A DNA stretch of 64,000 nt, taken from positions 62,001 to 126,000 of IMG/VR virus record IMGVR_UViG_3300034072_001021; one strand, 5' to 3'. Under the pieces are notes generated by a model, which was not told where the DNA came from, did not search any database, and was given only the letters and a program-made list of their open reading frames with translations. Below, one piece after another: positions 47,289 through 63,500 of this stretch (its first letter is position 1; every line of letters starts with the position of its first letter). A program made the translations under genes and the position numbers.

Positions 47289-47846
47289 CTAAAGGAGTTT
47301 AGTGACGTAGTACTCATGCAACAGAGACAAACGAATGTCTTCGGTCACATGACTGACACTGTGGTTGATGTAACTCGGGAAAATGTAGATGTCGCCTTTC
47401 TTCGGCGAGATCCGCAGATTAGCGAAGTGATGATTACGCATCGGCTTGGGATAACCACGAGCAGCATTACACCGAGGGTCGAACATGTTCAATGCATTCT
47501 CTGAATCCGACGGATAACAGATAGCGGAGATCACAGACCCAGGATGCAGGTGTGGGAATAGCCCTTCACCCGGAGGAATCCACTTGCCGTTTGTCTCGAC
47601 ATAGAATTCGTCCATTTCGTAATTGAAGCTGTGCTTCGAAAACTCCATGACAGCCGGGGTGATAATCTTGTCACGCATTTCAATGATGACAGGATAGTGT
47701 TCAGCCAAGACTTTTACCTGACTGTCATCTTCACCGCCCGTCATTGAATAGAGCGTGAACACCTCATTCGCAAACAAATCCATATCAAACTGATCGGCTA
47801 CGTTGAAGTGTGCGATCTCAGTGATCCATGGCTGCAAGTATTTCAT
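47289..47846 (-). CDS. Fe(II)/2-oxoglutarate oxygenase (TIGR02466-like)
   Basis: GGAGG RBS; PHLHPGSVISAICYP, FDPR, PKKGDIYIFPSYINHSV, IRLSL. Confidence 0.85.
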   Translation of the reverse strand: MKYLQPWITEIAHFNVADQFDMDLFANEVFTLYSMTGGEDDSQVKVLAEHYPVIIEMRDKIITPAVMEFSKHSFNYEMDEFYVETNGKWIPPGEGLFPHLHPGSVISAICYPSDSENALNMFDPRCNAARGYPKPMRNHHFANLRISPKKGDIYIFPSYINHSVSHVTEDIRLSLLHEYYVTKLL

Positions 47847-47847
47847 C

Positions 47848-48279
47848 TTAACCTCCCATGACAGAGCTAAGACCTTCCTCCGTGCACTCGAGTAGACAGT
47901 ACTTGACTGTCTGAGGTGCCCAGCCAGACTCCAACCAGTTTGGCATCGTCTTAAGACGCTCAATGATCTGGTCGTAAGTGGTGGGGTCTTTATCGTAAGT
48001 GACGAAGTAATGGTCGTGACCTAGGAACAGGTCTTCATCACGCAGGGTTTCGTAAATATCAATGCCATAGATCTCTTTAAGCTTGAACGCGTAAATGATC
48101 GCTACAGCATACGACTTGGCCGGATAGATCAATGGGAACGTTGCTTCCTTGAAATAGTGCAAGGCGTTCTCTACCAGCTCTTCTTCTTCGATAATCTCCA
48201 TGTTCTGGAAATCATCGGGATGATTCACTACCAGCTCTTCGTAGAGAAGCTGGTATTCCTTATACGGTTTGGAATTCAT
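47848..48279 (-). CDS. acidic hypothetical protein in the radical SAM cluster
   Basis: Coupled to both neighbours; YPAKSYAVAIIYA motif. Confidence 0.65.
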   Translation of the reverse strand: MNSKPYKEYQLLYEELVVNHPDDFQNMEIIEEEELVENALHYFKEATFPLIYPAKSYAVAIIYAFKLKEIYGIDIYETLRDEDLFLGHDHYFVTYDKDPTTYDQIIERLKTMPNWLESGWAPQTVKYCLLECTEEGLSSVMGG

Positions 48280-48703
48280 AATTGCTCACAAATGTGACCC
48301 GTAATTCAGGTTCGGGAGACGGTCTGACGTAATGAATCCAGCTGGCAGGGAATATGATCATTTTACCTTCTTCAGGGATAATCACGTTCTCACTACCGTC
48401 TGGCATGTTCATTACCAACTCACCCAATGAGTCAGTCAGGAATACCACTGAGGTGAATTCGTGAGGCAGGTGATCATGCGGCTTCACACCGACATCACCA
48501 ATGTGCACATGGTTAGCGCACAACCACAGGTCTTCACGTCCAGTGACCAACTGAGCCACAGGAAGAATGTGATCAATCGCCCATTGATTGAGTTTGCTCG
48601 AAGCAATGACGCCCAGATTGGGTTCAGCCAATAACTCAGCCAAAAGCCAATCTGGGACATCTACGCTAGAACATCCCATTTGTTTCGCATTCTCACCAGA
48701 CAT
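48260..48703 (-). CDS. Fe(II)/2-oxoglutarate oxygenase
   Basis: PHDH...TSVVFL, PEEGKMIIFPASWIHYV, RVTF (HxH...H...R); start uncertain (48703 or 48679). Confidence 0.8.
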   Translation of the reverse strand: MSGENAKQMGCSSVDVPDWLLAELLAEPNLGVIASSKLNQWAIDHILPVAQLVTGREDLWLCANHVHIGDVGVKPHDHLPHEFTSVVFLTDSLGELVMNMPDGSENVIIPEEGKMIIFPASWIHYVRPSPEPELRVTFVSNYEFQTV

Positions 48704-49686
48704 TCGTCTACCCCTAAGTGCGACATGACCGAGTGTATATCGCCGCGTGCACACCGATTGACGTGCATGCATTTACTACACAGGTCGCTAGTGCTCCACT
48801 TGATCAACTCAGTCAGATAAATTGATTCGTAGAACTCTTCGATAGACTCTGGTGTCCACGGTTGTTCAAGAGCAAACGCTTGATCGAAGATAGGGAACTT
48901 TTCAATCAGCGTAGGTGTATAGAACAACTCACCTTGCCGATAGGTCAGCTCTAAGCTATCTGTGGGAGGCTTGATCAGATAACGGTTGTACGGCGTATCG
49001 CGACACTCTTGAATGACATCGCAAAACTTACCAAACTCGTTCAAGAATAGTTGCCGATTGATCAGGTCATCAAACCCTCGGCGAACATGAGGGAAGACAT
49101 ACTCAACAAGCCTTCTCACACCAAAGTTCAATTCATGAAGATCTTGGTTGGCCTTCGGAGTAAAGTCACGTACAGAGTCACCAGTCATATTCACCGTCAA
49201 GTAAAGCAATTCGAACTTTACATCGGGTAGATGACTGATTACAAAGTCCACTCGACGTTTTACCAGATCTTGGTGTTTCTGGTTGTATGTGCTTTTGAGT
49301 GGAAACGGAGTTGCCAGTGTGAACGACTTACCTGCCATCAGTACATTCACTTTAGCACAGAGTTCTTCTAAACCATCATCGGACAATAACGCCAGCGGTA
49401 GCACGATACTTTCGTAACGTTCTGCTAGATCCTTGACCAACGGATGATCGAGAATATCAATCCCTGCCTTAGACGCAATCACGTCCACTGGCCCCACTGT
49501 GAACTCACGCAGCCGATAACCCCCTTGAGCCATCTGGTCAACCAATGTAATCAAACGCTCACGGTCATTATCGAAAGGACCGGGATCAAAGTCCCGGTCA
49601 ACCATGCAACCGACACACTGGTACTTACAACCCTGCAATATCTCAAGCGTCAGGTTAAACGCCTGGTTTGGAATTATTGCTGACAT
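48661..49686 (-). CDS. divergent radical SAM-like protein
   Basis: GCKYQCVGC (CxxxCxxC); GPVD where GGE is expected; C-terminal CSKC..VNRC...C cluster. Confidence 0.75.
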   Translation of the reverse strand: MSAIIPNQAFNLTLEILQGCKYQCVGCMVDRDFDPGPFDNDRERLITLVDQMAQGGYRLREFTVGPVDVIASKAGIDILDHPLVKDLAERYESIVLPLALLSDDGLEELCAKVNVLMAGKSFTLATPFPLKSTYNQKHQDLVKRRVDFVISHLPDVKFELLYLTVNMTGDSVRDFTPKANQDLHELNFGVRRLVEYVFPHVRRGFDDLINRQLFLNEFGKFCDVIQECRDTPYNRYLIKPPTDSLELTYRQGELFYTPTLIEKFPIFDQAFALEQPWTPESIEEFYESIYLTELIKWSTSDLCSKCMHVNRCARGDIHSVMSHLGVDECLVRMRNKWDVLA

Positions 49687-50707
49687 GACTAAGCCCCACT
49701 AGACAGTCACGGATCTTCATGCGCTCCATGATGTTGATGATCCCCTTCTCACTGCAGCTACTCATGTAGACGCACGTCATGCAGGGAGTGTCAGCCAAGT
49801 ACTCCATAGCTTTGTTCATGGCCTTCTGACGGGTATCGAGAAGATTCTCCATTGTCCAGGGCTTGGGGATGGTGAACTCGTCTTCAATAAACGGACAGTC
49901 GTCTTTGAGGAAGGGCACCCAGTACAATTTACCGCCGGTGTACAGCAAGTTCACCATAGTGCCTGTATGGTAGCACAGATCGGGATTACGGCGACGCTCA
50001 TCTTCACCAGACAACCCAGAATAGAACTGAGTGATGCGGTGTGACATGCGCTTGATATTCTCGCCAACAATCAGATCCTTGTTCGGTAAACGACCGTACG
50101 GGATATTCAAGATGTCATCTTTGTCCACAGGGAACTCGACATCAAATCCGTTCATCATCATTTCGTCAAAGTCTTCACCCACAGTCTCGTGAGTGCAGTT
50201 CACCACAAACCCAGCTTCGTTCAGATAAGCATCTTTAAGATGCTCTTTTACGAAGTTCAGTTTGGAGACGATCATGTCAGAGAACTTATTCGACTTGAAA
50301 AAGTGCGGAGCAGCAGGCATCAGGAAACGGACTGCTTTGCCAGGGATCGCGCGATCGATCTCTTCACACATCACCGCGTACTTGTCCATGTCTTTCTCAA
50401 GGAACGCAGCGTTGAAGGTCACCTGATGGAACTCTTGCGCCATCTCACGGAACACTGGGTGCTCCATGACTTCATTGACGTTATCGGCAGACATGTAGTC
50501 AGTAGGGCCAATACCGAGATCGAATGCAACGTAACCGTTGTCAACCATCTCATTGATCAATGCACTCAATTCAGGGATGTCATTAACATCCCCGCCCAGC
50601 GTACGATCGATCATGCAGCCAGAACAGCTGTGTTGACATCCACGGAAGATGTCAAGGGTGATTTCAAGACGTTGCCGGTGTTGAACCGACCCGTATGCCA
50701 TTTTCAT
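49655..50707 (-). CDS. divergent radical SAM-like protein, paralog of the 48661 gene
   Basis: GCQHSCSGC; GPTD; C-terminal CMTC..MSSC...C cluster. Confidence 0.75.
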   Translation of the reverse strand: MKMAYGSVQHRQRLEITLDIFRGCQHSCSGCMIDRTLGGDVNDIPELSALINEMVDNGYVAFDLGIGPTDYMSADNVNEVMEHPVFREMAQEFHQVTFNAAFLEKDMDKYAVMCEEIDRAIPGKAVRFLMPAAPHFFKSNKFSDMIVSKLNFVKEHLKDAYLNEAGFVVNCTHETVGEDFDEMMMNGFDVEFPVDKDDILNIPYGRLPNKDLIVGENIKRMSHRITQFYSGLSGEDERRRNPDLCYHTGTMVNLLYTGGKLYWVPFLKDDCPFIEDEFTIPKPWTMENLLDTRQKAMNKAMEYLADTPCMTCVYMSSCSEKGIINIMERMKIRDCLVGLSHVSNNSKPGV

Positions 50708-51626
50708 GTGAACCCCATTTATCGATTAGTCCGCGGAACCCATTGCAGGAGTTCTCCAAGGATTTGACATCACGTAAGTGCTCAGAGAGACAGTGACCGT
50801 TATACGGACAAGTCGAGCAGATAGGATTGCTATTGACTCGAGACTTCTCCAACTCACACCATTGCCGATATGCATCAAGGCTATCGAGCGTCAAGAAAAA
50901 CTCATTGTCGTTCTCATCGAACTCCAGTACAGCATAGTCGCCAGTCGGAGTGATGTAGACATGGTCATCACTGTACGCGTTACGAGTCTTCTCAAACGCT
51001 TCTTTGACCTGCGTCTCGTTTTCGAAGTAGAAGGTTCGTTCAGGATGTTCGATAACTGCCCAGACGAACTCTTCAAACTCCTTGTACGTCACATTTTGCT
51101 GGTTTGCCTGATTCGAGCTGTAAGGCTTGATCTCAGCGCTTTTCAGGTTACCCAGGAGGTTCATCGTCTGAACGTACAAGTCGGGCGTGACGGTGTCCAG
51201 AAAGGCCCTAGAAGCCAATGTCAGCACATTGAACGGCTGAGTCATCAGTAACATGTTCTGCAACACGTTCTCGTTACGCTCACGTGCACCGAAATCGTAA
51301 GACACTGAGAACTCGTAACACTGATCATGGACAATGTCAGGCATGAACGACAAGTTGGTCTGTATCACGATGTCATCGATACCACGTGCGTAGAGGATAT
51401 CGAGGATAGTGTACAGATACTCTTCCTTGAGTAGTAGAACTTCGCCACCATAGAGGTCAACGTGCCCGATGGTATAATGTTCCATGATCTCGTCAATCAT
51501 AGCCGCTACACGATCAGGACTGATGCACGTAACATCAGACAATTGCGTTGGTGTTAGGTAGCAGAAATCACACCGGAAGTTGCAGTAGTACCATGGATTC
51601 AGTGACACATTTAGATGCGTTTTCAT
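50664..51626 (-). CDS. radical SAM protein with SPASM/twitch-like C-terminus
   Basis: YCNFRCDFC, LYGGE, QTNLS, YITPTG, CSTCPYNGHC..EH...CNG. Confidence 0.9.
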   Translation of the reverse strand: MKTHLNVSLNPWYYCNFRCDFCYLTPTQLSDVTCISPDRVAAMIDEIMEHYTIGHVDLYGGEVLLLKEEYLYTILDILYARGIDDIVIQTNLSFMPDIVHDQCYEFSVSYDFGARERNENVLQNMLLMTQPFNVLTLASRAFLDTVTPDLYVQTMNLLGNLKSAEIKPYSSNQANQQNVTYKEFEEFVWAVIEHPERTFYFENETQVKEAFEKTRNAYSDDHVYITPTGDYAVLEFDENDNEFFLTLDSLDAYRQWCELEKSRVNSNPICSTCPYNGHCLSEHLRDVKSLENSCNGFRGLIDKWGSHENGIRVGSTPATS

Positions 51627-51756: not shown

Positions 51757-52845
51757 TTAGCCCTTAGCAATGAGCTGTACGGATTCGTCCACGTAAGGCG
51801 TAGGGGTCATGTATTCTGACATCCCGTTGATCTCGATGATACGTGGAGCCAATGTCTTCATCTTCTTGCAGTGGTGTTCTACCAGCCCCATCTTTTTGGT
51901 ATCTGCAATGGTCTTCTTGCAACCATTGCAGATGCTGAACATAGGACAGACATAGCACGACTGCTTCATGGTCTGAATATCGTCAGCCTCTTGAAGAGGT
52001 GTGAAGAATTCGCCAGCCATTTCTTTTTCGAAGTCGACGGGATATGCGCCATCATCACCAAACGCACCACACGTGAAGTACCCACCGCCTGGCTGCATGG
52101 CACGGATACCTTCATCGCAGTTTCTGGCTAGTGGGCAAGTGGTGTTGGCAGACTTCAATCGCCGAGCCATCTGTTTGGTATTGTACTCCCACTCCATTAG
52201 GCCTGCATCGTAGATCTGAATGTAGTGTTCGTACATATCCGCTTGAGTGAAGAAATTATCCTCACTGCCCATGACGATGCCACGATTATTGATCTTGGGA
52301 CCAGAAGCCATGACGTAATTGATCTTGGCTTCTACACCGAGTTCCTTAGCCAACCTGACAGTATCAAGAACGGAGTGACGATTGTCTTCATCAATGACCG
52401 CAATGAAGTCAAGGCTGTATCCGATCATCTCTGTAAACAGTGCGTTTACATTCCTGAAGTCTTCTTCAGTGAAGACCGTGCCATCGCCCTTGATGCGTTT
52501 GTCACCATATTGGAATGATGTGGTGATGCCTAGACGTGGATGACGGAACAATTCTGTCCACAGCTCAGGCTTCTTGTAGAACGGCCAAAGGTTACTGGTG
52601 AAACTGATACTTGCCTCAGAACCCAGACGATCCAGCATCGCAATCATCTCCCAGTAATACTCAGGAGGCATCATGAGCGGATCACCACCATTCACAATGA
52701 TGGTCCGTGTCTCTGGATAACGAGTGATGAAACGTTCGATGTCAGCAATGGTGACAATGTCATCACGGTTATCTGACAGGTGAGTACTTGAGCAGAACGT
52801 GCACCTGAAGTTACAGGCTACCGTCGGCTTAACGATAAGATCCAT
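51757..52845 (-). CDS. radical SAM/SPASM protein
   Basis: ACNFRCTFC, NGGDP, FTSNL, CPLARNC, TCG, CYVCPMFSICNGC...HC. Confidence 0.92.
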   Translation of the reverse strand: MDLIVKPTVACNFRCTFCSSTHLSDNRDDIVTIADIERFITRYPETRTIIVNGGDPLMMPPEYYWEMIAMLDRLGSEASISFTSNLWPFYKKPELWTELFRHPRLGITTSFQYGDKRIKGDGTVFTEEDFRNVNALFTEMIGYSLDFIAVIDEDNRHSVLDTVRLAKELGVEAKINYVMASGPKINNRGIVMGSEDNFFTQADMYEHYIQIYDAGLMEWEYNTKQMARRLKSANTTCPLARNCDEGIRAMQPGGGYFTCGAFGDDGAYPVDFEKEMAGEFFTPLQEADDIQTMKQSCYVCPMFSICNGCKKTIADTKKMGLVEHHCKKMKTLAPRIIEINGMSEYMTPTPYVDESVQLIAKG

Positions 52846-52849
52846 TGCG

Positions 52850-53086
52850 TCACCGATTGTGCGGAAATGGTTTTTGTTTCATCAGTTCTGTCGCTTTGGC
52901 TGAGAATGGTTCTGAACCATCTTCCCTTGCAGACAACACATAAGCGAATTCTTTACCTGGACGATGTTCTAGCACGTAGAGTTTATCGCCGTGACGAGCA
53001 TGTAGAAACGCAGGATGATCACCGCATGCATCGGTTTGAATAACACATCCGGCGTACGCAACATCACCAACCTTGAAAAGAGCCAT
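52850..53086 (-). CDS. small hypothetical protein (SH3-like FKVGD start)
   Basis: GGAG RBS before MALFKVGD; ends 4 nt before the radical SAM gene. Confidence 0.6.
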   Translation of the reverse strand: MALFKVGDVAYAGCVIQTDACGDHPAFLHARHGDKLYVLEHRPGKEFAYVLSAREDGSEPFSAKATELMKQKPFPHNR

Positions 53087-53169
53087 GGTCAACTCCATTA
53101 AAATTATCATACCGATTAGCCTGTTATGTTTTAAATACTCGGTATTTTCTATAGACCATAACAGGAGCC

Positions 53170-54186
53170 ATGGAAATGGACAAAGTACACATTGTTGTTA
53201 GCCGTCTGATGAACAACTTCGGTATCCTTCCTCAGGGTATTGTGATCGGTGGAAAACGCGTGTTCTTCCATAACGACCCGCGCATGTCGGCTGATGGAGA
53301 CACCGTCCACTTTAACTTCGATTACATGATCACCGACGGTACCATCAAGATCGACAGTGACGTAGATGCAGAGAGTATTGTTCCTGCGCACATGTTGTCG
53401 ATCACCAAGCGGTATAACAAGTTCGAGCAAATGACCCGCCTTCGCAACTTTGCTACCGAGCAAGCAAAGAAGGGCAAGTTCGACATCGACAACTTCGTTG
53501 TGCCGGGTGTCTGGTACAACAAACAACAATCCGGTCTGTCTAACCTGGTCATTCCAGATGAAGAGACGGTCATTGTCAAACCGGCCGATGGTGCTCGTGG
53601 TATCGGTCAGTTCATGGTGAAACTGGATAAGATCCCATTCGTGGTATTTGTCGAGACACTCGATCGGTACCGCTTAGGGAAAATAACTGAAGAGCAGTTT
53701 TGGTTAGGACTCAATAAGTTCTCAGGTTGCTATGTCTATTCCACGGCTGGCGAACATTACGAGAACGAAGGTCTTCTTTCCCTGAAGAACCAAGGCTACG
53801 TAGTTCAGGGTTTTGTTAAAGACGTCTGCTCTGAATACCGACTCTTGACCGATCTTGATGGTAAGATCGCTTACTGTCAAATGCGAGGTATCCGCGATAA
53901 AGATCAGTCTGAATTCCCTCAGGCTACTGGGTCGGACACCAACAGCATCGAGGGCAGTGATATCGTCCCTATCGATGAAGTCGTTAATAAACGCACTCTC
54001 AGAGATCTGAATGCGGTTGCATCAAAAGTCGTTGGGCCTCTCAGTTCTATCGATCTCTTCTTAACCGAAGATGGTCGTTGGGGGATCTTCGAGTACTGCA
54101 ACCAGTTCGGCATCAAGGGCGTTCCAATGGAGACGACGTTCAAACTCCATTACGACTTTATTGAACGACTCATTGGAGATAAGTGA
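53170..54186 (+). CDS. ATP-grasp family ligase (RimK-like)
   Basis: VIVKPADGARGIG, YVVQGFV, EYRLL, SIDLFL...GIFEYCNQFG in ATP-grasp order; AGGAG RBS. Confidence 0.7.
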   Translation: MEMDKVHIVVSRLMNNFGILPQGIVIGGKRVFFHNDPRMSADGDTVHFNFDYMITDGTIKIDSDVDAESIVPAHMLSITKRYNKFEQMTRLRNFATEQAKKGKFDIDNFVVPGVWYNKQQSGLSNLVIPDEETVIVKPADGARGIGQFMVKLDKIPFVVFVETLDRYRLGKITEEQFWLGLNKFSGCYVYSTAGEHYENEGLLSLKNQGYVVQGFVKDVCSEYRLLTDLDGKIAYCQMRGIRDKDQSEFPQATGSDTNSIEGSDIVPIDEVVNKRTLRDLNAVASKVVGPLSSIDLFLTEDGRWGIFEYCNQFGIKGVPMETTFKLHYDFIERLIGDK

Positions 54187-54415: not shown

Positions 54416-55411
54416 TTACTTCAGGATAACGTCGTACATCGCCTTAATGCGGCAACTATCATCCAGACCATCCTCGATAAATGAATGATGGAGGAAGCAG
54501 CGCATACCACAGCGGGAGTAATACTCACACGCAAAGCAGTTGTACTTCTCAACGAAACGAAGCTCGGCCTCGTCCTTTGCCATCAGTCCCTCTTTCTCAT
54601 CGAGAATAGAGTTCTTCCCGGCTTCACTCCAGCAGGTCGTCACCACATTGTCTTTGTTGACAATCTTGGTGGAACGACAGGTGGTCTCGTTGAACTTGTT
54701 TTCCTTCCAGTCCTTGATCGGATAGGAATTCGGGTACCGTTCATTGAGATGGATGTAGAGCTTACTGATCAGATCCTCGTCGGGCTGAAGATGCTCGTAC
54801 ATGTGACTCGGGATGTAATGGTCAAAGTAGACATTGAAGTTCTCACAGAGCCAGTCCACCTCGGCACCCTCTTTACCTTCTAGGAATGACTCGATGTTCT
54901 GCTTAGTGATCACGACATTGACTGTCTTGACGTAATCCTTGACTTTCACCAGGTTCTCGAAGAACTTCTTACGGTCTTCTGGGTTGAAACGCCCCGCAGG
55001 ATCGTAGGAGGTTGCAACGATACAGTTACCGTGCTTACGAAGGCGCTCAACAAGCGCTATAAGTCGATTTACGTGATAGTAGACAAGGTTGGTACCCAAG
55101 ACCAAGATAGCGTCGTCATAGTACTCCAGAACCCGTTTACCGGCTTCGTAGAATGCGTCGAACAACGAATCAGGATATTGGTCAAGGAACAACTCACCGC
55201 CAGTGAAATTGACGACGTACTGATCAGTTGGACTGGTATTGGCCAGCAACTGATCTACCTTGCCATGAATGTCAGTCATTCCGACAATAGAATCGTGATC
55301 TTGGTGGCAGAATGAACATCTCAGATTACAGTACTCAAAGAAAATAAGATGAGCCTCCTTTCGGAGGCCCTTCTTTTCCCTGAGTATGTCTACGACAGGG
55401 ATCAACTCCAT
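54416..55411 (-). CDS. radical SAM/SPASM-like protein
   Basis: YCNLRCSFC, FTGGE, LGTNL, TSYDP.GRF, TCRS, CW, CFACEYYSRCGMRC...C. Confidence 0.9.
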   Translation of the reverse strand: MELIPVVDILREKKGLRKEAHLIFFEYCNLRCSFCHQDHDSIVGMTDIHGKVDQLLANTSPTDQYVVNFTGGELFLDQYPDSLFDAFYEAGKRVLEYYDDAILVLGTNLVYYHVNRLIALVERLRKHGNCIVATSYDPAGRFNPEDRKKFFENLVKVKDYVKTVNVVITKQNIESFLEGKEGAEVDWLCENFNVYFDHYIPSHMYEHLQPDEDLISKLYIHLNERYPNSYPIKDWKENKFNETTCRSTKIVNKDNVVTTCWSEAGKNSILDEKEGLMAKDEAELRFVEKYNCFACEYYSRCGMRCFLHHSFIEDGLDDSCRIKAMYDVILK

Positions 55412-56466
55412 TACCAGTTGGCTCCTACGAGGGCCTCATTGAGCACAGAGAGATCCGCATTCAGAATGAACCGAATCAGGTTCTCATCGTACTTACCAGT
55501 ATCACGGAAAGCCATAGCAATGCGGTGTTCACCATTGAAGATGGCGTTGACACGCTCCATGCAGACTGCTGGGTCACCCGGATTCTCGACTGCCGACAGC
55601 AGCGAGAGGATCATGGACGCACGCTTGGCAGACGACTCGTCTTCCAGTACGTTCATCAGCGTGATGGCTTCTTTCAGCATGTTCTTCAGCCATGCATCAT
55701 TCGGCTTGAAGTCGTACAGGCCAGGACGCAGCAGTTGCTGGCTAGCCAGATGAGGCATGTTCACGCAGGCCTCGAACACCGTCGGTGCAGTCAGCAGACT
55801 ATCCAGATCACAACCACCTACTTCCCAGAACTTCTCACGAGTCAGGTGACGACCCCAAACTTCCAGCGCATCATGGGCGTTGCTGAGCGCAATGCGACGC
55901 AGGATGTTCTTGATGGTTTTCGGGATCTTGCCAACACGCTGCTCGGTACGCAGACGGATCAGACGCCATTCCAGCGACAAGGCATCCGGATCATCATTGA
56001 CCAGATCGACCATGGCTTCTTGGAAAGCTTCAGTGCGCTTGTAGACTTCTTCCACTTTAGCCGCAGTGAACGTGACAGAGCCGAGTACGTCTACACGAGG
56101 TTCGCCACCGGCACAGATGACAGTGTTGAACGTGGCTTTCTTGCACACCATGATCCAGCGGAAAGTGTCCAGGTCGATCGACGGCATGAGGGCCTTGATC
56201 AACGACGCGTACAGGCGCAGATAGGTGTCGCCATCGCAATAGATCATGGTCTTGTTTTCAGAAGCATGAGCTTCCTTCATTGCAGCCAGGAACTTCTCGA
56301 CGTCTACCGTATCCAGAGAAGTAGCCCAATACAGCTGCTTGCCGACTTCTTCGTGGGCAGCGGGGAAGTACTCATGGCCATGCTCGGGGGAGATGGTGAT
56401 GACATTGTGAGATCGGTCGATCCGACGCTCCGAGTCGACATACGTCGAATTAAACAGATGGTACAT
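55411..56466 (-). CDS. hypothetical protein in the radical SAM cluster
   Basis: Strong codon bias; overlaps both neighbours. Confidence 0.7.
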   Translation of the reverse strand: MYHLFNSTYVDSERRIDRSHNVITISPEHGHEYFPAAHEEVGKQLYWATSLDTVDVEKFLAAMKEAHASENKTMIYCDGDTYLRLYASLIKALMPSIDLDTFRWIMVCKKATFNTVICAGGEPRVDVLGSVTFTAAKVEEVYKRTEAFQEAMVDLVNDDPDALSLEWRLIRLRTEQRVGKIPKTIKNILRRIALSNAHDALEVWGRHLTREKFWEVGGCDLDSLLTAPTVFEACVNMPHLASQQLLRPGLYDFKPNDAWLKNMLKEAITLMNVLEDESSAKRASMILSLLSAVENPGDPAVCMERVNAIFNGEHRIAMAFRDTGKYDENLIRFILNADLSVLNEALVGANW

Positions 56467-57205
56467 GTTCGATCCCTTTCAAGAGTTCTTGACATTCCAG
56501 CATGGAGCTGCGGGCAGCAGCTTCAAGCTTAGCCACACCGTCCGGCTCTGCAATGGCAAGCAGACCAACGAACAGCGGATTGCGCTTGCTGGCGAAGTGA
56601 TGGAAGAGGTTCTTACCGGCAAAACAATACTTGTCGAACAGCATGGGGTTCCACGACAGTTCTTGTTGCTCTACCGAATTGAAGAAATTGGGGAACAGTT
56701 CATGATCGATCAGTTGGACGAAGTTGATACCGCGCAGGTCTTCACTTTCGTCTTTCTCAAACTGCTCGACCATCGATTTGGTATTCGGTGCAGTGTGCAG
56801 AGCAAACACCATGAGCGACAGAATGCGTTTGAGCCACTGTTCGATGATCTCTTCGTTTTCAGCGATGAAGTTGGCCGGATCGAAGTCCAGGAAATTCATC
56901 TCGCCCCGACAAAGCAGTAGGAGGTTGATCGCAAGATCTTCCATCTCACTGAATTTGACCAACAGCGCACTGTTGAGATACGACTTCAGCAACTCGAGTT
57001 TAGATTCTTGAGTGCTGAACGTAACCCGACAGTTGAGGTTCAAGTTGGTAAGGTACGTGAGGAACGTATCACCTTTGAACGCACTCTTGTCGTAGTCTAC
57101 GACGAATTGCACGTTCTCCTTAAACTTACGTTTCAGGTCATTGATCGGGATTGGGGCAGCGGTTTCGATGATTACCAACTCGCCCTTGTCTTGATTCTCG
57201 CTCAT
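56450..57205 (-). CDS. hypothetical protein in the radical SAM cluster
   Basis: TAGGAG RBS; operonic, directly after the Cys/His-tail gene. Confidence 0.7.
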   Translation of the reverse strand: MSENQDKGELVIIETAAPIPINDLKRKFKENVQFVVDYDKSAFKGDTFLTYLTNLNLNCRVTFSTQESKLELLKSYLNSALLVKFSEMEDLAINLLLLCRGEMNFLDFDPANFIAENEEIIEQWLKRILSLMVFALHTAPNTKSMVEQFEKDESEDLRGINFVQLIDHELFPNFFNSVEQQELSWNPMLFDKYCFAGKNLFHHFASKRNPLFVGLLAIAEPDGVAKLEAAARSSMLECQELLKGIEHVPSV

Positions 57206-57217
57206 GGTCGCTCCTAA

Positions 57218-57757
57218 TTACCGGCGGCCACGGTTACTGTGGCAGCTGCTGTGACAACTGGTGTGGCAGATGGTGTTGGTCAGGGTCAGGGTGGTGAAGC
57301 GGGTATTGAGCGCATATGCGACCCAGAGATCTTCACATGCCTGATTGAAGTCTGCCAAATTCATCTCGTTACCGTTTGCAAACGGCATGGCCACATTATT
57401 GGCAAATGCTGGAACAAACGCAACTACGTTAGCAACTGCTGTTTGATCACTGACTACCGTGGCACCAACTGAGTAGTGCGACATGTAGATCACGATACGA
57501 GTATTACGTACACCACCAAACAGATTGGTCACGTATTTGAGTGCGTTGATGACATTGGTGGCGTTGGTTTTATCCTGATCGCCCCAGCTGTCATTAGTCC
57601 ACGCAGCACCCGGTCCAGCTGTGGTTCCAGCAAACCATTCTGGAAGTGAGTACGCCGGATAGTTGTTGGTGCCCCATGCAATACCGGAAATGGCCCGGTT
57701 TCGAATCAGTGAGTTAGCGTTTGCAGTCATTCGACTGCGGCGCAGTTCTTCAGTCAT
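57218..57757 (-). CDS. Cys/His-repeat-tailed protein, putative substrate/precursor of the radical SAM cluster
   Basis: C-terminus ICHTSCHSSCHSNRGRR; starts 1 nt after the SPASM enzyme stop. Confidence 0.75.
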   Translation of the reverse strand: MTEELRRSRMTANANSLIRNRAISGIAWGTNNYPAYSLPEWFAGTTAGPGAAWTNDSWGDQDKTNATNVINALKYVTNLFGGVRNTRIVIYMSHYSVGATVVSDQTAVANVVAFVPAFANNVAMPFANGNEMNLADFNQACEDLWVAYALNTRFTTLTLTNTICHTSCHSSCHSNRGRR

Positions 57758-57758
57758 G

Positions 57759-58793
57759 TCACACCTTCAATATCAGGTTTGAATGTTGGTTTCTACCGGA
57801 AAGGTAACGGAGTGTGTTCTTCAAGCCACCGCATCGACCGTTCTGCCAAGGGAGTCTGTGACAATCACCTCCACATAGATCGAACACGTCGCAGCCTAAA
57901 CAACCCGGCTCCCATGTAAGCTCTTTTACAATTTCATTGACTCGACCGTCTGACGTCAAGAACGTCTCTATCGAATCGGTGATTTTGGCGTGGTGTTTTT
58001 GAGTGGCTGCATTAGGGCAGCCGGACAACGTACCATTGGAATTGATTGTGACCAGATTCTGTTCACAGTTCCGACAGTTAGTGTCTACCTTCACCACGTT
58101 CTTCTGGATCTTCTCTTCAAGAATATCCAAGGTCTTTATCCTGACCCGAGGAGAGCGTTCTTTATAACGTTTGAATAGCGCCAGATACCAATTGTCTTGC
58201 TCTTCGTTATTAGGGAAGATGTCAAGGTTCTCAGTAGCGCTGCCATCCAGCGTCAGTCGTTCGAGTGAACACTCTTGAATAGGGAGTGACTCCAGATGGT
58301 CCAAGAACCAATCTGGGGTCTTCTGTATCAGATCTTTACTGACCGATACCTTAACAGCAATACCAATGCCTTCATCGGACAACACTTGAAGGTTGTGCTT
58401 CCAGAGGTCGTATTGTTTCTGGTTGGACCACCTGATCCAATTGTCCCAGCTTGTCCCTATCCAGCTGCCGAAGTAATCCTTGATGAATGCGATCTGCTCA
58501 TCACTCATCTTGAACGTGAGATTACTGTTGGCGCACATGGTTACATTTTCCATGTGTTTGAATCTGTCTGCAAACCGCTTGAGCTTTTCAACAGGAACGA
58601 GGAAAGGCTCACCACCATGAAACTCGAAATGGTACTGTGTATCGTCAGGATATTGCTGGATGAACTGTTCTACCCAGTCGGCGGTTGCTTCTGGATCAAA
58701 CTGTGTTTTGTCGCCATTCTTGCCGTTGGTGAAACAGTGCTGGCAATTCAGGTTACAGGTTCCAGTCGTCTTGACGTAGATGACTTTATTCAT
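57759..58793 (-). CDS. radical SAM/SPASM peptide-maturase-like enzyme
   Basis: TCNLNCQHC, FHGGEP, NSNL, NCRNC..NLVTINSNGTLSGCP, CLGC..FDLCGGDC...C. Confidence 0.93.
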   Translation of the reverse strand: MNKVIYVKTTGTCNLNCQHCFTNGKNGDKTQFDPEATADWVEQFIQQYPDDTQYHFEFHGGEPFLVPVEKLKRFADRFKHMENVTMCANSNLTFKMSDEQIAFIKDYFGSWIGTSWDNWIRWSNQKQYDLWKHNLQVLSDEGIGIAVKVSVSKDLIQKTPDWFLDHLESLPIQECSLERLTLDGSATENLDIFPNNEEQDNWYLALFKRYKERSPRVRIKTLDILEEKIQKNVVKVDTNCRNCEQNLVTINSNGTLSGCPNAATQKHHAKITDSIETFLTSDGRVNEIVKELTWEPGCLGCDVFDLCGGDCHRLPWQNGRCGGLKNTLRYLSGRNQHSNLILKV

Positions 58794-58795
58794 GG

Positions 58796-59314
58796 TTAGA
58801 GCTTCTGTTCGATAAACAACTCGAGACCAAAACTGAGCATCACGGATTGTTCATGGTTGATGGCCTGGTGTTTGACACCACGCGGAATGTAAAGCATCTG
58901 TCCTTCTTCGAGCATGAAGTTACCACACTCGGTCAGGAACTCTTTTCGACCTTCCACCATGTAGATCACGACATCATCGAGATCGATGTGCATGGGAAAG
59001 CTCAAGGAATCTTTGGGTGACAGAAAGAGATGAGCAGATACGTAACCATAATGTCCATAGTGCTTGGCTAGTGCCGCAGCTACCTTGAACATAGTTTCGT
59101 TGAACCGCTCATAACCCTCGATCTTGACTGGACAGCAATCGACTTCCATCGCCTCCAGAACATCGGTAGGACCGTTCGCTAAAACAGACCCACCGTGTTT
59201 GATATATTTGACCAGTTGCTGGAGATAAGGATAGGGGCTTGCAAGAAGATCATCAATGCGAAGATCTTCCTTCTTAAGTCCGATCAAACCAAACTCAGAA
59301 ATTCGATGGACCAT
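58796..59314 (-). CDS. JmjC/Cupin_4 (ROX-like) Fe(II)/2OG hydroxylase
   Basis: AGGAGG RBS; SAHLFLSP...SFPMHIDLDDV...EGRK, LEEGQMLYIPRGVKHQA (HxD...K...H). Confidence 0.85.
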   Translation of the reverse strand: MVHRISEFGLIGLKKEDLRIDDLLASPYPYLQQLVKYIKHGGSVLANGPTDVLEAMEVDCCPVKIEGYERFNETMFKVAAALAKHYGHYGYVSAHLFLSPKDSLSFPMHIDLDDVVIYMVEGRKEFLTECGNFMLEEGQMLYIPRGVKHQAINHEQSVMLSFGLELFIEQKL

Positions 59315-59331
59315 TACAAGCCCCTCCTTTA

Positions 59332-60906
59332 TCAGTTCATCCAGTACGCCGGCCAGACTTGACGCCACGTGCCGTCTACAGTCGCATACAGTCGACCACC
59401 TGCATTGAGCAGTTGGATTTCCTGCGTGTTACCGAGAACGGGTTCGTTAGCACCTTCCGCCACATGGCCACTCCAAGTGGCAGGCCAGAGTTGTTTCCAC
59501 TGGCCGCTGATGTAACCCTGGAGCTTACCATTCACCACACGAAGGCTGGTATTGGTAGCAGTGTTCAGGCGGACATAACGGTTGTCATGGTCACCCGAGT
59601 TGATGTGGTCGAACATGGCCCCAGCTAACAGCAGAGTCGAATCGCTGTTGAGGTTTCGTGCACGAGTCACAGCGTTGGGGATGTTACTCAGACCAACCTG
59701 TGCTTTAGTGGTTTGGTGCGGGTTGTTGGTGTCCGAAATGTGGGCGTTCAGCAAATTGCCCGCAATGAACATGATCGCTTCTTTAGTCCGTTGTGGGGTC
59801 ATGAAGCGGTTGCTTGCAGATCCCAGTTCGGCTTCGGCTTTGGTAGCCGTTTGGAAGTTATCAACCAGACCTAGACCCACCTGAGCTTTGGTGGTAGCGT
59901 GCGGGTTGTTGGTGTCAGCTGCGTGCGCATTGAACGCGTTGCCAACATGGAACATGATTGCCTGGTAAGTACGCAGGGGTGTCATGAATTTGTTGTTGAC
60001 AGTTTGTGACTCAGCCTCTGCCCGCATGGCCGTAGCAAAGTTATCCACCATGTCGAGACCAACTTGCGCCTTGGTCACTTCATGGGGGTTATCTTTACGA
60101 GCCTCATGGATCATGGTGATTTCGGTTGCCACACGAGTCGACAGAAGGTTACTGCCGTACGGTGTCATGAACCGATCCATCAGTACACCAGCGCTAGCCT
60201 CAGCATCACTGGCAGTCAGGAAGTTATCGACGTTGCCGAGACCTACCTGCGCCTTAGTGGTACGGTGTGGATTATTGAAGTCGTCAATGTGGTTGTCCAC
60301 TTTGGTATCGACTGCAACAATCTGAGCTTCCAGCTGATCACGAATGTACTGCATCTGTGCACGCAGTTCATCATGAGACGCCTCGTCACCTACCAGGATC
60401 GCATTGGTAATGCGCTCCAGCTGCCAGGTCACGTACTCCCAGCCGTAGGTGTCACCGATATCATGGATGTGGGGTGCCGGTGGATAAGCCGTCGGACGAC
60501 CAAGAACAGAACCCCACTTGATGGGACGTTCATCCAGATCCAGTTCTTCGATCAGAGCAGCCAGCGCGCCGAGGTTCCACGAATACTCACCACCGATCAC
60601 ACGGTAGTTCATCGTGATACGAATCGGAGCATTGACTTTCAGAACGACAGCACACTGGACGTCTTTACCACTACGAAGACTAGCTTGCTGGAACGGCTGC
60701 ACCAGCAGATAGTCGTCGACCGGGCGCAGAGGTTCGAGGGTGTTGGCGTCGAAGATCTCGAACGATTCGGTGAAGAAAGGGCCTGCCATAGGAACGAACA
60801 CACGTGCCGTGTTCGTTGTGATATCTCGGACCTCACCGACGATTTCGTTCGTCGGCGAAGTACCATTCAGATCCAGCGGATACTGAATGATCGGTGGTAG
60901 ACTCAT
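59332..60906 (-). CDS. tail-fibre-like virion protein
   Basis: YPLDLNGTSPTNEI N-terminus; four NPHxxTKAQVGL repeats; duplicated W.Q.WPA.W C-terminal module. Confidence 0.85.
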   Translation of the reverse strand: MSLPPIIQYPLDLNGTSPTNEIVGEVRDITTNTARVFVPMAGPFFTESFEIFDANTLEPLRPVDDYLLVQPFQQASLRSGKDVQCAVVLKVNAPIRITMNYRVIGGEYSWNLGALAALIEELDLDERPIKWGSVLGRPTAYPPAPHIHDIGDTYGWEYVTWQLERITNAILVGDEASHDELRAQMQYIRDQLEAQIVAVDTKVDNHIDDFNNPHRTTKAQVGLGNVDNFLTASDAEASAGVLMDRFMTPYGSNLLSTRVATEITMIHEARKDNPHEVTKAQVGLDMVDNFATAMRAEAESQTVNNKFMTPLRTYQAIMFHVGNAFNAHAADTNNPHATTKAQVGLGLVDNFQTATKAEAELGSASNRFMTPQRTKEAIMFIAGNLLNAHISDTNNPHQTTKAQVGLSNIPNAVTRARNLNSDSTLLLAGAMFDHINSGDHDNRYVRLNTATNTSLRVVNGKLQGYISGQWKQLWPATWSGHVAEGANEPVLGNTQEIQLLNAGGRLYATVDGTWRQVWPAYWMN

Positions 60907-63359: not shown

Positions 63360-63500
63360 TTCTCTTTCTCCGTTGGGATCTCCATCGATCTGAAGACCGA
63401 TTAACGGGGATCTTGGTGTACGGCACTTTTCTAAAAACAGACTGTGTCTAATATGGAATATCAAACAACTGGCATACCATTATCGTGGGAGACGCGTTAA

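What the first reader, a model, noticed from the sequence alone, without database searches (positions are those of the whole stretch)
48661..50707. Tandem paralogous non-canonical radical SAM-like proteins with GPxD replacing GGE
Seen: both proteins keep GCxxxCxGC but have GPVD or GPTD where the other four have GGE/GGD. They align along their length (LTLEILQGCKYQCVGCMVDR vs ITLDIFRGCQHSCSGCMIDR; ELTYRQGELFYTP...PWTPE vs NLLYTGGKLYWVP...PWTME; CSKC..C...ECLV vs CMTC..C...DCLV). Known: GGE binds the methionine amino group of SAM. Inference: Fe-S proteins with altered or lost SAM cleavage, possibly a heterodimeric scaffold, electron carrier or new chemistry.
Basis: partly seen in the sequence, partly recalled or inferred. 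Interest (0 to 1): 0.6.

Follow-up and report, generated by a model that had tools for sequence, protein, structure and literature searches.

The report
Phage-only divergent radical-SAM-like Fe-S enzyme pair
Two neighbouring genes of a giant (259 kb) phage encode diverged copies of an undescribed, phage-restricted branch of the radical SAM enzyme superfamily. They sit in a conserved enzyme cluster that probably modifies the cysteine/histidine-rich tail of a phage protein, and the unusual GPxD motif alone does not show they have lost normal SAM chemistry.

Summary
ORFs 48661-49686 (A, 341 aa) and 49655-50707 (B, 350 aa) are paralogues (23% identity, E 1e-34). Both keep CxxxCxxC, have GP[VT]D where four neighbouring radical SAM/SPASM genes have GGE/GGD, and end in CxxCx5C...C.

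They belong to a coherent family with no Pfam, NCBIfam or named PHROG match. It has about 195 clusters at 50% identity and is found essentially only in jumbo phages. Its signature is GCx3CxGCxV, GPTD, a later Asn and Arg, and a SPASM-like tail keeping only the four second-half cysteines.

AlphaFold models (pLDDT 91) match the anaerobic sulfatase maturase and RiPP maturases over about 300 residues (Z 15).

The genes lie in a fixed 12-kb module seen in more than 30 phages. It holds a JmjC oxygenase, four canonical rSAM/SPASM enzymes, 2OG oxygenases and a 179-aa protein whose only conserved part is a C-terminal CHxSCHxxCHxxRGRR.

The inference of lost SAM cleavage is weak. GGE varies among solved enzymes and NifB has a cis Gly-Pro at that site. 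An acidic residue is near-invariant in GPTD. All cluster cysteines survive repeated duplication. Other SAM-motif deviations keep altered chemistry open. The heterodimer test gave no verdict.

The parts
48661..49686 (-). Gene A, 341 aa: the faster-evolving GPTD-family radical-SAM-like paralogue (GPVD here)
   Evidence: ORF. 26 homologues. AF2 pLDDT 90.9. anSME Z 14.9 over 297 residues. The A clade is monophyletic with long branches.
49655..50707 (-). Gene B, 350 aa: the slower-evolving GPTD-family paralogue; its start overlaps gene C by 44 nt and its end overlaps gene A by 32 nt
   Evidence: ORF. 100 homologues. AF2 pLDDT 91.3. anSME Z 15.4 over 300 residues.
49606..49629 (-). A: CxxxCxGC cluster motif (C20, C24, C27) with Gly instead of an aromatic before the third Cys
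49483..49494 (-). A: GPVD at the C-terminal end of predicted strand beta2, the place where GGE normally sits
48700..48780 (-). A: CxxCx5C...C, the four cysteines of the second half of the SPASM motif (one auxiliary cluster)
   Evidence: motif definition from PMC6231123
50615..50638 (-). B: CxxxCxGC cluster motif (C24, C28, C31)
50498..50509 (-). B: GPTD directly after predicted strand beta2
49703..49783 (-). B: CxxCx5C...C auxiliary-cluster cysteines (C309, C312, C318, C335)
50664..51626 (-). Gene C: canonical radical SAM (GGE, aromatic in the Cys loop); like A and B it has only the CxxCx5C...C half of SPASM
   Evidence: PF04055 hit; sequence; hhalign to the GPTD family, probability 91%
51757..52845 (-). 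Gene D: canonical radical SAM/SPASM (GGD)
54416..55411 (-). Gene E: canonical radical SAM/SPASM (GGE)
   Evidence: hhalign to the GPTD family, probability 93%
57759..58793 (-). Gene F: canonical radical SAM/SPASM. Best NCBIfam matches are anaerobic sulfatase maturase and PapB-type ranthipeptide maturase, both far below the curated cut-offs
57218..57757 (-). 179-aa protein with an invariant C-terminal CHxSCHxxCHxxRGRR-stop; candidate substrate of the module
   Evidence: The tail is conserved in 31 unique sequences while the rest of the protein is not. The gene always follows gene F.
58796..59368 (-). JmjC/cupin oxygenase at the head of the module (ORF as listed; the true start may be internal)
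   Evidence: PF08007 JmjC_2, E 1e-12; synteny
55411..57205 (-). Two conserved module proteins of unknown function (351 aa at 55411-56466; 251 aa at 56450-57205)
   Evidence: No family hits; conserved synteny
47289..48772 (-). Downstream module genes: 2OG-Fe(II) oxygenase (47289-47963), conserved 143-aa protein (47848-48279) and a second 2OG-like protein (48260-48772). ORFs as listed; starts are probably internal
   Evidence: PF13759 hits; PHROG 81; synteny

Best explanation
A and B are two anciently duplicated members of a jumbo-phage-specific subfamily of the SPASM-type radical SAM fold, here called the GPTD family.

Cofactors (inferred). Each most likely binds a site-differentiated [4Fe-4S] cluster on CxxxCxGC. 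Each also most likely binds one fully Cys-ligated auxiliary cluster on CxxCx5C...C, the 'Aux II' half of SPASM. The Aux I half is gone.

Role (inferred). I think they are still catalytic. They work beside four canonical rSAM/SPASM paralogues, a JmjC oxygenase and 2OG oxygenases in one co-directional, partly overlapping gene array. The array probably modifies a protein substrate post-translationally. The best candidate is the C-terminal CHxSCHxxCHxxRGRR tail of the 179-aa protein encoded in the module.

Mechanism (inferred).
- SAM still chelates the unique iron.
- The Gly-Pro peptide, which forms cis peptides easily, replaces the cis Gly-Gly of GGE, as seen in NifB.
- The near-invariant Asp takes the place of the Glu/Asp of GGE.
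- 5'-deoxyadenosyl radical abstracts a hydrogen from the tail, leading for example to a thioether or other cross-link, or to Cys oxidation.
- The remaining auxiliary cluster acts as an electron conduit.

Shown: paralogy, fold, motif conservation, family range and synteny. Inferred: cluster binding, SAM use, the substrate and the reaction.
For: - Paralogy: E 1e-34.
- Fold: confident models (pLDDT 90.9 and 91.3). They match anSME at Z 14.9-15.4 over 297-300 residues, followed by ChlB, SuiB, CteB, SkfB, TigE and viperin.
- Homology to the canonical neighbours: hhalign gives probability 93% to family E and 91% to family C.
- Cysteines: all seven are present in every full-length family member that was aligned. 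They are also kept in every paralogue after repeated duplications, 1 to 5 copies per phage.
- GPTD: the Asp is present in 132/134 rows and the motif lies right after strand beta2. The alignment to family E puts P-T-D on G-G-E.
- Literature: GGE identity varies and acts through the backbone. [quoted passage not shown] 22 of 48 solved enzymes lack GG. NifB has a cis Gly-Pro peptide at this site.
- Cys loop: the residue after the third Cys is often aromatic family-wide (F 27, Y 25, H 14). In SkfB that neighbouring residue also packs on adenine.
- Module: synteny is fixed in more than 30 jumbo-phage loci.
- Substrate candidate: the Cys/His tail is invariant in 31 unique sequences.
- Protein-directed chemistry: the JmjC_2 domain and the peptide-maturase-like best matches of genes D and F point to a protein substrate.
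Against: - No Pfam Radical_SAM hit, even at E 0.1, and no PDB hit by sequence profile.
- Three SAM-contact motifs deviate together: no aromatic before the third Cys, no GG, and Ser to Pro in the ribose motif.
- The ribose-motif acid is kept in 86/129 of the wider family but is lost in exactly the A and B clades.
- The alignment to family C places GGE on S-A-x rather than on P-T-D, so the Asp/Glu equivalence is not settled.
- Aux I is absent. It is the cluster nearest the active site, and SkfB needs it for the late steps of thioether formation.
- A evolves 2-3 times faster than B.
- No experiment exists for any family member. The substrate link rests on synteny and conservation only.
Confidence: 0.5

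Rival explanations
1. A and B keep their Fe-S clusters but no longer cleave SAM. They serve the canonical paralogues as non-catalytic partners, for example by holding the substrate tail or relaying electrons, possibly as a heterodimer.
For: Three SAM motifs deviate and the ribose-motif acid is lost specifically in the A and B clades. There is no Pfam hit. The family almost always co-occurs with canonical rSAMs C-F. The A and B genes overlap and are always adjacent. A evolves fast.
Against: A site-differentiated three-Cys motif is kept in every copy through many duplications. Copy number runs from 1 (RSL2) to 5 (L042), so an obligate A-B pair is not general. A lone family member occurs in a T4-like giant phage with no other rSAM within 10 kb. 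The complex prediction gave no support, though it is no evidence against either. Many polar residues are strictly conserved in B, which looks like an active site.
Confidence: 0.22
2. A and B are catalytic but use the radical SAM fold for non-canonical chemistry. Possibilities are a carboxylate (the Asp of GPTD) or a substrate Cys/His ligating the unique iron as in TsrM, an alternative SAM bond cleavage, or another co-substrate.
For: In TsrM the acid of the GGE-site motif ligates the unique iron and blocks radical chemistry. The GPTD family has a near-invariant Asp at that site and a Gly that enlarges the pocket next to the cluster. The candidate substrate offers three Cys-His pairs that could bind iron. 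B's N-terminus gave weak, non-significant hits to ArsL-type and CUAEP-tail rSAM families (E 0.03-0.05).
Against: There is no positive evidence. No cobalamin or other cofactor domain is present, and the weak hits are at chance level. NifB shows that a Gly-Pro at this site is compatible with an ordinary SAM-binding radical SAM core.
Confidence: 0.18
3. The module, including A and B, does not act on the CH-tail protein. It acts on another target, such as the adjacent tail-fibre proteins, DNA or nucleotides (hypermodification), or a small molecule.
For: The module always lies next to tail-fibre-like genes. RSL2 has a dihydrofolate reductase inside the module. Some neighbours match MoaA, viperin and QueE families weakly. 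[quoted passage not shown]
Against: The best structural and family matches are peptide/protein maturases. The JmjC_2 domain family consists of protein oxygenases (function from general knowledge). The invariant 16-residue tail on an otherwise variable protein encoded inside the module is hard to explain otherwise.
Confidence: 0.15

Closest known systems
Anaerobic sulfatase-maturating enzyme anSME (PDB 4K36-4K39), prototype rSAM/SPASM enzyme
   Same: Best structural match for both models: Z 14.9-15.4 over 297-300 aligned residues, covering the barrel and the C-terminal domain. Like anSME, A and B have no N-terminal RRE domain; their Cys motif starts at residue 20-24. It acts on a Cys/Ser in a short protein motif.
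   Different: Only 9-12% identity, and no hit to TIGR03942. A and B have no GG pair, no aromatic in the Cys loop, an altered ribose motif, and only 4 of the 7 SPASM cysteines, so one auxiliary cluster instead of two.
Twitch-domain radical SAM enzymes (BtrN, SkfB, MoaA)
   Same: Radical SAM core plus a truncated SPASM-like domain with a single auxiliary cluster. SkfB is among the top structural matches (Z 12).
   Different: Twitch is the first half of SPASM and binds Aux I. A and B keep the second-half cysteines (CxxCx5C...C) and the hairpin Gly, but lack the first-half cysteines. This is the opposite truncation. Assigning these four Cys to Aux II rests on my recollection of the anSME structure.
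NifB (radical SAM carbide synthase)
   Same: A cis Gly-Pro peptide occupies the GGE region, shifted by one residue (PMC10267522). From memory, the motif there reads G-P-G-D, i.e. GPxD; I could not verify this with the tools.
   Different: Only a weak structural match (Z 9.1). The architecture and cluster complement differ and it is not a SPASM-type protein.
TsrM (cobalamin-dependent rSAM methylase that does no radical chemistry)
   Same: A radical SAM fold in which the acidic residue of the GGE-site motif has a new role: it ligates the unique iron. This is the precedent for the 'altered chemistry' rival.
   Different: TsrM has a cobalamin domain and a D-S-E motif. No cobalamin domain is present in A or B.
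SCIFF/ranthipeptide and sactipeptide systems (CteA/CteB, PapA/PapB)
   Same: rSAM/SPASM maturases act on a Cys-rich C-terminal region to form Cys thioethers. CteB is a top structural match (Z about 12). Gene F hits the PapB family at E 2e-14, far below the curated cut-off. The tail has regularly spaced Cys (Cx3Cx3C).
   Different: The candidate substrate is a 179-aa protein rather than a ~45-aa peptide. Each Cys is followed by His. Six rSAM-type genes plus oxygenases are present instead of one maturase. No RRE and no leader peptidase or exporter were seen. No chemistry has been demonstrated.
Paralogue C of the same module (50664-51626)
   Same: Shares the reduced C-terminal Cys set (CxxCx5C...C only). 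hhalign probability 91% over the full length.
   Different: C keeps GGE, the aromatic residue in the Cys loop and a PF04055 hit.

Membership tests
Radical SAM superfamily (PF04055 / CX3CXphiC enzymes) | Three-cysteine CX3CX2C motif for a site-differentiated [4Fe-4S] cluster | tested here: met
   Present in A, B and every full-length relative (131/131 aligned rows)
Radical SAM superfamily (PF04055 / CX3CXphiC enzymes) | Aromatic residue (phi) before the third Cys | tested here: not met
   Gly in 120 rows, Asp in 9, never aromatic. Neighbours C-F have F, F, F and H.
Radical SAM superfamily (PF04055 / CX3CXphiC enzymes) | Partial (beta/alpha)6 TIM-barrel core | tested here: met
   The AF2 models show six beta-alpha units. 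Structural matches to solved rSAM enzymes reach Z 15.
Radical SAM superfamily (PF04055 / CX3CXphiC enzymes) | GGE motif at the end of beta2 | tested here: inconclusive
   The sequence is GP[TV]D, with no GG pair. The position is right. Equivalence of P-T-D to G-G-E is supported by one profile alignment and contradicted by another. The motif is known to vary.
Radical SAM superfamily (PF04055 / CX3CXphiC enzymes) | Ribose motif (polar Ser/Asp at the end of beta4) | tested here: not met
   T-S-x-D of the paralogues aligns to T-P-F-P (A) and M-P-A-A (B). The wider family keeps an acid at the last position in 86/129 rows.
Radical SAM superfamily (PF04055 / CX3CXphiC enzymes) | Score above the Pfam gathering threshold | tested here: not met
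   No Pfam family at E <= 0.1 for A or B. NCBIfam gave only chance-level hits.
Radical SAM superfamily (PF04055 / CX3CXphiC enzymes) | Reductive cleavage of SAM to 5'-deoxyadenosyl radical | not testable with these tools
   Needs anaerobic biochemistry
SPASM domain (seven-Cys motif CX9-15GX4C-gap-CX2CX5CX3C-gap-C) | All seven cysteines, giving two auxiliary clusters | tested here: not met
   Only CX2CX5C...C (4 Cys) and the hairpin Gly are conserved. Motif definition.
Twitch domain | Truncated SPASM keeping the first-half (Aux I) ligands | tested here: not met
   The first-half cysteines are absent and the second-half cysteines are present
Anaerobic sulfatase maturase (TIGR03942) | Score above the curated cut-off | tested here: not met
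   No hit for A or B. F scores 57.5 bits against a cut-off of 349.
Ranthipeptide/SCIFF-type RiPP system | Short Cys-rich precursor next to its rSAM/SPASM maturase, with thioether product | tested here: inconclusive
   A Cys-rich invariant tail is encoded next to F, but on a 179-aa protein. No SCIFF or maturase model scores above its cut-off. The product is unknown.

The most novel reading that the evidence does not exclude
The GPTD family is a phage-born branch of the radical SAM fold that has given up 5'-deoxyadenosyl radical chemistry. It would use its open-site [4Fe-4S] cluster, plus a lone Aux II-type cluster, for something else. One example is binding a Cys-His pair of the substrate tail directly, or binding the motif's Asp, to do redox or sulfur chemistry. 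This would happen within a previously unknown multi-enzyme protein modification pathway of nucleus-forming-type jumbo phages.
Probability: 0.2. Interest if true: 0.8.

Novelty: new variant of a known kind. Interest (0 to 1): 0.55.

Why it matters
Radical SAM enzymes are usually recognised by CX3CXphiC, GGE and Pfam PF04055. This family escapes all standard family models, and gene callers often cut off its cluster motif. Yet it is strictly conserved in a 12-kb, six-rSAM module of many 220-280 kb phages. These include phages of Pseudomonas aeruginosa, Ralstonia and Burkholderia that are being studied for therapy and biocontrol.

If the module modifies the invariant Cys/His tail, it would be a new phage-encoded post-translational modification, and an 'Aux II-only' relative of the SPASM and Twitch domains. 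The family also offers a natural test of how far the SAM-binding motifs can drift (Gly-Pro for Gly-Gly, no aromatic, no ribose Ser/Asp) before radical chemistry is lost.

Tried and rejected
- **Heterodimer test.** Complex prediction on A plus B, each with its alignment, scored 0.38, 0.00 and 0.01. The verdict was 'no answer', so it counts neither for nor against binding.
- **PDB sequence-profile searches.** Searches with the A and B family alignments found nothing significant. phmmer of paralogue F against the PDB found nothing either. I therefore could not map SAM contacts residue by residue through a solved structure.
- **Model coordinates.** They are not available in the Python box, so no pocket analysis or superposition was possible.
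- **First hhalign run.** A small canonical alignment gave only an N-terminal match at probability 82%. Deeper family profiles gave full-length alignments, but those disagree on the GGE equivalence.
- **NifB motif.** I tried to fetch a NifB sequence to verify G-P-G-D. The family search returned no loci, so that detail stays a recollection. The cis Gly-Pro statement itself is from PMC10267522.
- **RP12/RP31 cluster.** The radical SAM cluster of phages RP12 and RP31 is a different cluster (B12-rSAM, MoaA-like, MgoB) and says nothing about this module.
- **ATP-grasp idea.** I dropped an early guess that the plus-strand gene at 53170-54186 is an ATP-grasp protein. It has no family hit and is present in only some loci.
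- **SPASM/Twitch review.** PMC4326806 is not held.
Full report
**What the window is.** The window is part of a complete 259,140-bp virus record with terminal repeats. Its closest cultured relative is the phiKZ-like Pseudomonas phage pPa_SNUABM_DT01, at 74% nucleotide identity over the finding. Distant relatives of the two proteins occur in the Ralstonia/Burkholderia jumbo phages RSL2, RSF1, FLC6 and FLC8, where they are annotated only as hypothetical proteins.

**The observation.** ORFs 48661-49686 (A, 341 aa) and 49655-50707 (B, 350 aa) lie head to tail on the minus strand. They overlap each other by 32 nt, and B overlaps the upstream radical SAM gene by 44 nt. BLASTP of A against B gives 23% identity along the whole length, E 1e-34. 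Both have CxxxCxxC near the N-terminus, GPVD or GPTD, and a C-terminal CxxCx5C...C. The four other radical SAM genes of the region (C 50664-51626, D 51757-52845, E 54416-55411, F 57759-58793) have GGE, GGD, GGE and GGE. They hit Pfam PF04055 and SPASM-type NCBIfam models. A and B hit no Pfam family even at E 0.1. They have no significant NCBIfam family and no named PHROG.

**Conservation and family.**
- Word-based searches found 26 relatives of A and 100 of B. All come from metagenomes, and many from contigs of 220-290 kb.
- Every full-length relative keeps the Cys motif, the GPxD-type motif and the C-terminal cysteines.
- An exhaustive profile search with a joint A+B alignment found 195 clusters (50% identity level) at E <= 0.001 and 175 at E <= 1e-10 among 1.84 billion representatives. 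Almost all are 330-390 aa and match end to end.
- Across about 135 full-length rows the signature is G-C-x3-C-x-G-C-x-V, then [I/L]-G-P-T-D, an Asn six residues later (128/135), an Arg near strand 6 (119/133), a YxxGxxYxxP hairpin, and four C-terminal cysteines present in every row aligned there.
- The residue before the third Cys is Gly in 120 rows, Asp in 9, and never aromatic.
- In the GPTD motif, D occurs in 132/134 rows, P in 124 and T in 122.
- GPVD is thus a local variant of a family-wide GPTD. The least variable element is the Asp, not the Pro: B-type relatives with G-A-T-D exist, and RSL2 has Q-P-T-D.
- Many database gene models, including the one for this window's B, start at the Met right after the Cys motif and so hide it. 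Most relatives have no Met there, yet the N-terminal 25-30 residues are conserved. The long ORFs are therefore the real proteins.

**Fold.** AlphaFold2 models built on the family alignments are confident (pLDDT 90.9 and 91.3, pTM 0.89).
- They show six beta-alpha units, then a beta-hairpin and a helical Cys-rich tail.
- The best structural matches for both are anSME (Z 14.9-15.4, 297-300 aligned residues, 9-12% identity). After it come ChlB, SuiB, CteB, SkfB, TigE, viperins, EpeE and MoaA.
- In the ESM Atlas and BFVD, the nearest shapes are unnamed viral clusters. Bacterial rSAM/SPASM proteins follow.
- Sequence profiles of the family find nothing in the PDB.
- Profile-profile comparison links the family over its full length to the module's canonical paralogue families E (probability 93%) and C (91%).
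- A and B are therefore very divergent members of the SPASM-type radical SAM fold.

**The SAM motifs, one by one.**
1. *Cys loop.* The three Cys are kept and the aromatic is lost. However, the residue after the third Cys is often aromatic in the family. In SkfB that neighbouring residue also contacts adenine.
2. *GGE site.*
   - GPTD follows predicted strand beta2 directly, which is where GGE sits.
   - MAFFT aligns G-P-x on G-G-E. hhalign against family E aligns P-T-D on G-G-E, acid on acid. hhalign against family C aligns GPTD on C's own G-H-V-D, and S-A-x on G-G-E. The exact equivalence is unresolved.
The motif's 'residue identity varies' and it acts through a backbone hydrogen bond. [quoted passage not shown] In TsrM the Glu instead ligates the unique iron and blocks radical chemistry (PMC9204698).
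   - Of 48 solved radical SAM enzymes, 22 lack the GG pair. The SPASM-type enzymes have a cis Gly-Gly peptide. NifB has a cis Gly-Pro peptide shifted by one residue (PMC10267522). A Gly-Pro that readily adopts a cis peptide is thus a plausible functional stand-in for cis Gly-Gly.
3. *Ribose motif.* T-S-x-D in the paralogues aligns to T-P-F-P in A and M-P-A-A in B. The wider family mostly has x-P-x-[E/D], so the acid was lost specifically in the A and B clades.
4. *Auxiliary clusters.*
   - The SPASM motif is CX9-15GX4C-gap-CX2CX5CX3C-gap-C, and Twitch is its first half binding Aux I (PMC6231123).
   - A and B keep only CX2CX5C...C and the hairpin Gly. From my recollection of the anSME structure, these four Cys are the Aux II ligands. 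That makes the architecture the reverse of Twitch.
   - Paralogue C shares this reduced set while keeping GGE and the aromatic.

**Genomic context.**
- A survey covered 33 IMG/VR loci, DT01, RSL2 and three metagenomic loci. It shows a nearly invariant order. The genes run: tail-fibre-like, JmjC cupin, F, CH-tail protein, 251-aa protein, 351-aa protein, E, D, C, B, A, then a 2OG-like gene in some loci. After that come the 143-aa protein, one or more 2OG oxygenases, a 212-aa protein and a transglycosylase.
- Across the same loci B is 59-81% identical to the window's B, whereas A is only 31-68% identical to the window's A.
- In a tree, the B and A clades are each monophyletic and the A branches are about 2-3 times longer.
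- RSL2-type phages have one copy. L008 has an independent tandem pair plus a B12-type rSAM. L016, L037 and L035 have three copies. L007 has three or four, and L042 has five. Every full-length copy keeps all seven cysteines.
- One distant member stands alone in a T4-like giant phage, next to an A-type Fe-S carrier gene.
- A pattern-based scan of 185,579 prokaryotic species genomes found only a 2.6-kb contig that also carries C and A, i.e. phage DNA. That scan relies on one peptide pattern, so its sensitivity is limited.

**Candidate substrate.**
- The 179-aa protein at 57218-57757, always encoded just after F, ends in ...CHTSCHSSCHSNRGRR-stop.
- In 31 unique homologues the body of the protein is poorly conserved, but the last 16 residues fit CHxSCHxxCHxxRGRR in nearly every sequence.
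- An invariant tail on a variable protein, inside a module of peptide-maturase-like rSAM/SPASM enzymes, a JmjC_2 oxygenase and 2OG oxygenases, looks like a modification site.
- The regular Cys spacing recalls SCIFF/ranthipeptide precursors, whose Cys form thioethers through rSAM/SPASM enzymes.
- The last Cys followed by x-x-x-Arg loosely recalls the sulfatase Cys-x-Pro-x-Arg site of anSME. Both resemblances are leads from memory, not tests.

**Most likely function.** A and B are Fe-S enzymes of this module, not decayed copies. The argument rests on three points:
- the seven cysteines are strictly retained in every full-length paralogue through repeated duplications;
- many polar residues are invariant in B;
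- copy number varies from 1 to 5.

Whether they still make 5'-deoxyadenosyl radical cannot be decided in silico. I put about 0.5 on ordinary SAM radical chemistry with a re-built binding pocket. I put about 0.2 on a non-catalytic Fe-S partner role and about 0.2 on altered cluster chemistry. The question of the target (tail protein versus something else) is separate. The heterodimer idea remains untested, since the complex prediction gave no verdict.

**Novelty.** The DT01 paper lists the six genes as radical SAM genes without analysis. Other phage papers list only the canonical ones. I found no description of the GPTD signature, the Aux II-only tail, the conserved module or the Cys/His tail, but my literature searches were few and keyword-based. 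I rate this a new variant of a known kind. It is of moderate interest as it stands, and of high interest if the chemistry proves non-canonical or the tail modification is new.

Noticed in passing
window 57218-57757 (-); also L001, L002, L007, L008 and about 30 IMG/VR loci: A 179-aa protein whose only conserved part is an invariant C-terminal CHxSCHxxCHxxRGRR-stop. It is always encoded right after rSAM/SPASM gene F and is the likely modification target of the module.
   Followed up: partly
window 59332-60906 and 60966-63464 (-): Two large proteins with many repeats of the form NNPHxxTKAQVGLxNVxN...AEAExG...RFMTPxRT. They look like tail fibres, always flank the module, have no Pfam hit, and could be an alternative target of the oxygenases.
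   Followed up: no
window 49655-50707 and 48661-49686; database proteins such as P0027: Public gene calls for many family members start at the Met immediately after CxxxCxxC, so the Fe-S motif is missing from the deposited proteins (319, 308-312 or 314 aa forms). RSL2 ORF071 is likewise annotated too short.
   Followed up: yes
L006 10001-11008 (metagenomic T4-like giant phage contig): A lone, distant GPTD-family member with no other radical SAM gene within 10 kb. It sits next to a PF01521 Fe-S biosynthesis (A-type carrier) gene.
   Followed up: no
L008 13250-14854; L042 and L007: Variant modules: L008 adds a B12-binding radical SAM gene and has its own tandem GPTD pair. L042 carries five GPTD paralogues and L007 three or four, one of them a 523-aa form with an N-terminal extension.
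   Followed up: partly
L009 (NZ_JACOQI010000067.1, 2.6 kb contig of a Dysosmobacter segnis assembly): The only hit in the prokaryote genome collection is a short contig carrying C, B and A homologues (B 67% identical). It is almost certainly jumbo-phage DNA in a bacterial assembly.
   Followed up: partly
window 53170-54186 (+): A 338-aa gene on the opposite strand, inserted between E and D. It has no family hit and is present in only some related phages (L011, L012, L014, L015), so it looks like an insertion into the module.
   Followed up: no
window 52850-53110 (-): A small 86-aa ORF between D and the inserted gene, conserved in a few loci only (L015, L018, L033, L035). Its function is unknown.
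   Followed up: no
window 37197-40163 (+): A 988-aa protein with a long Gly/Asp/Glu-rich acidic C-terminal tail. It was not examined.
   Followed up: no
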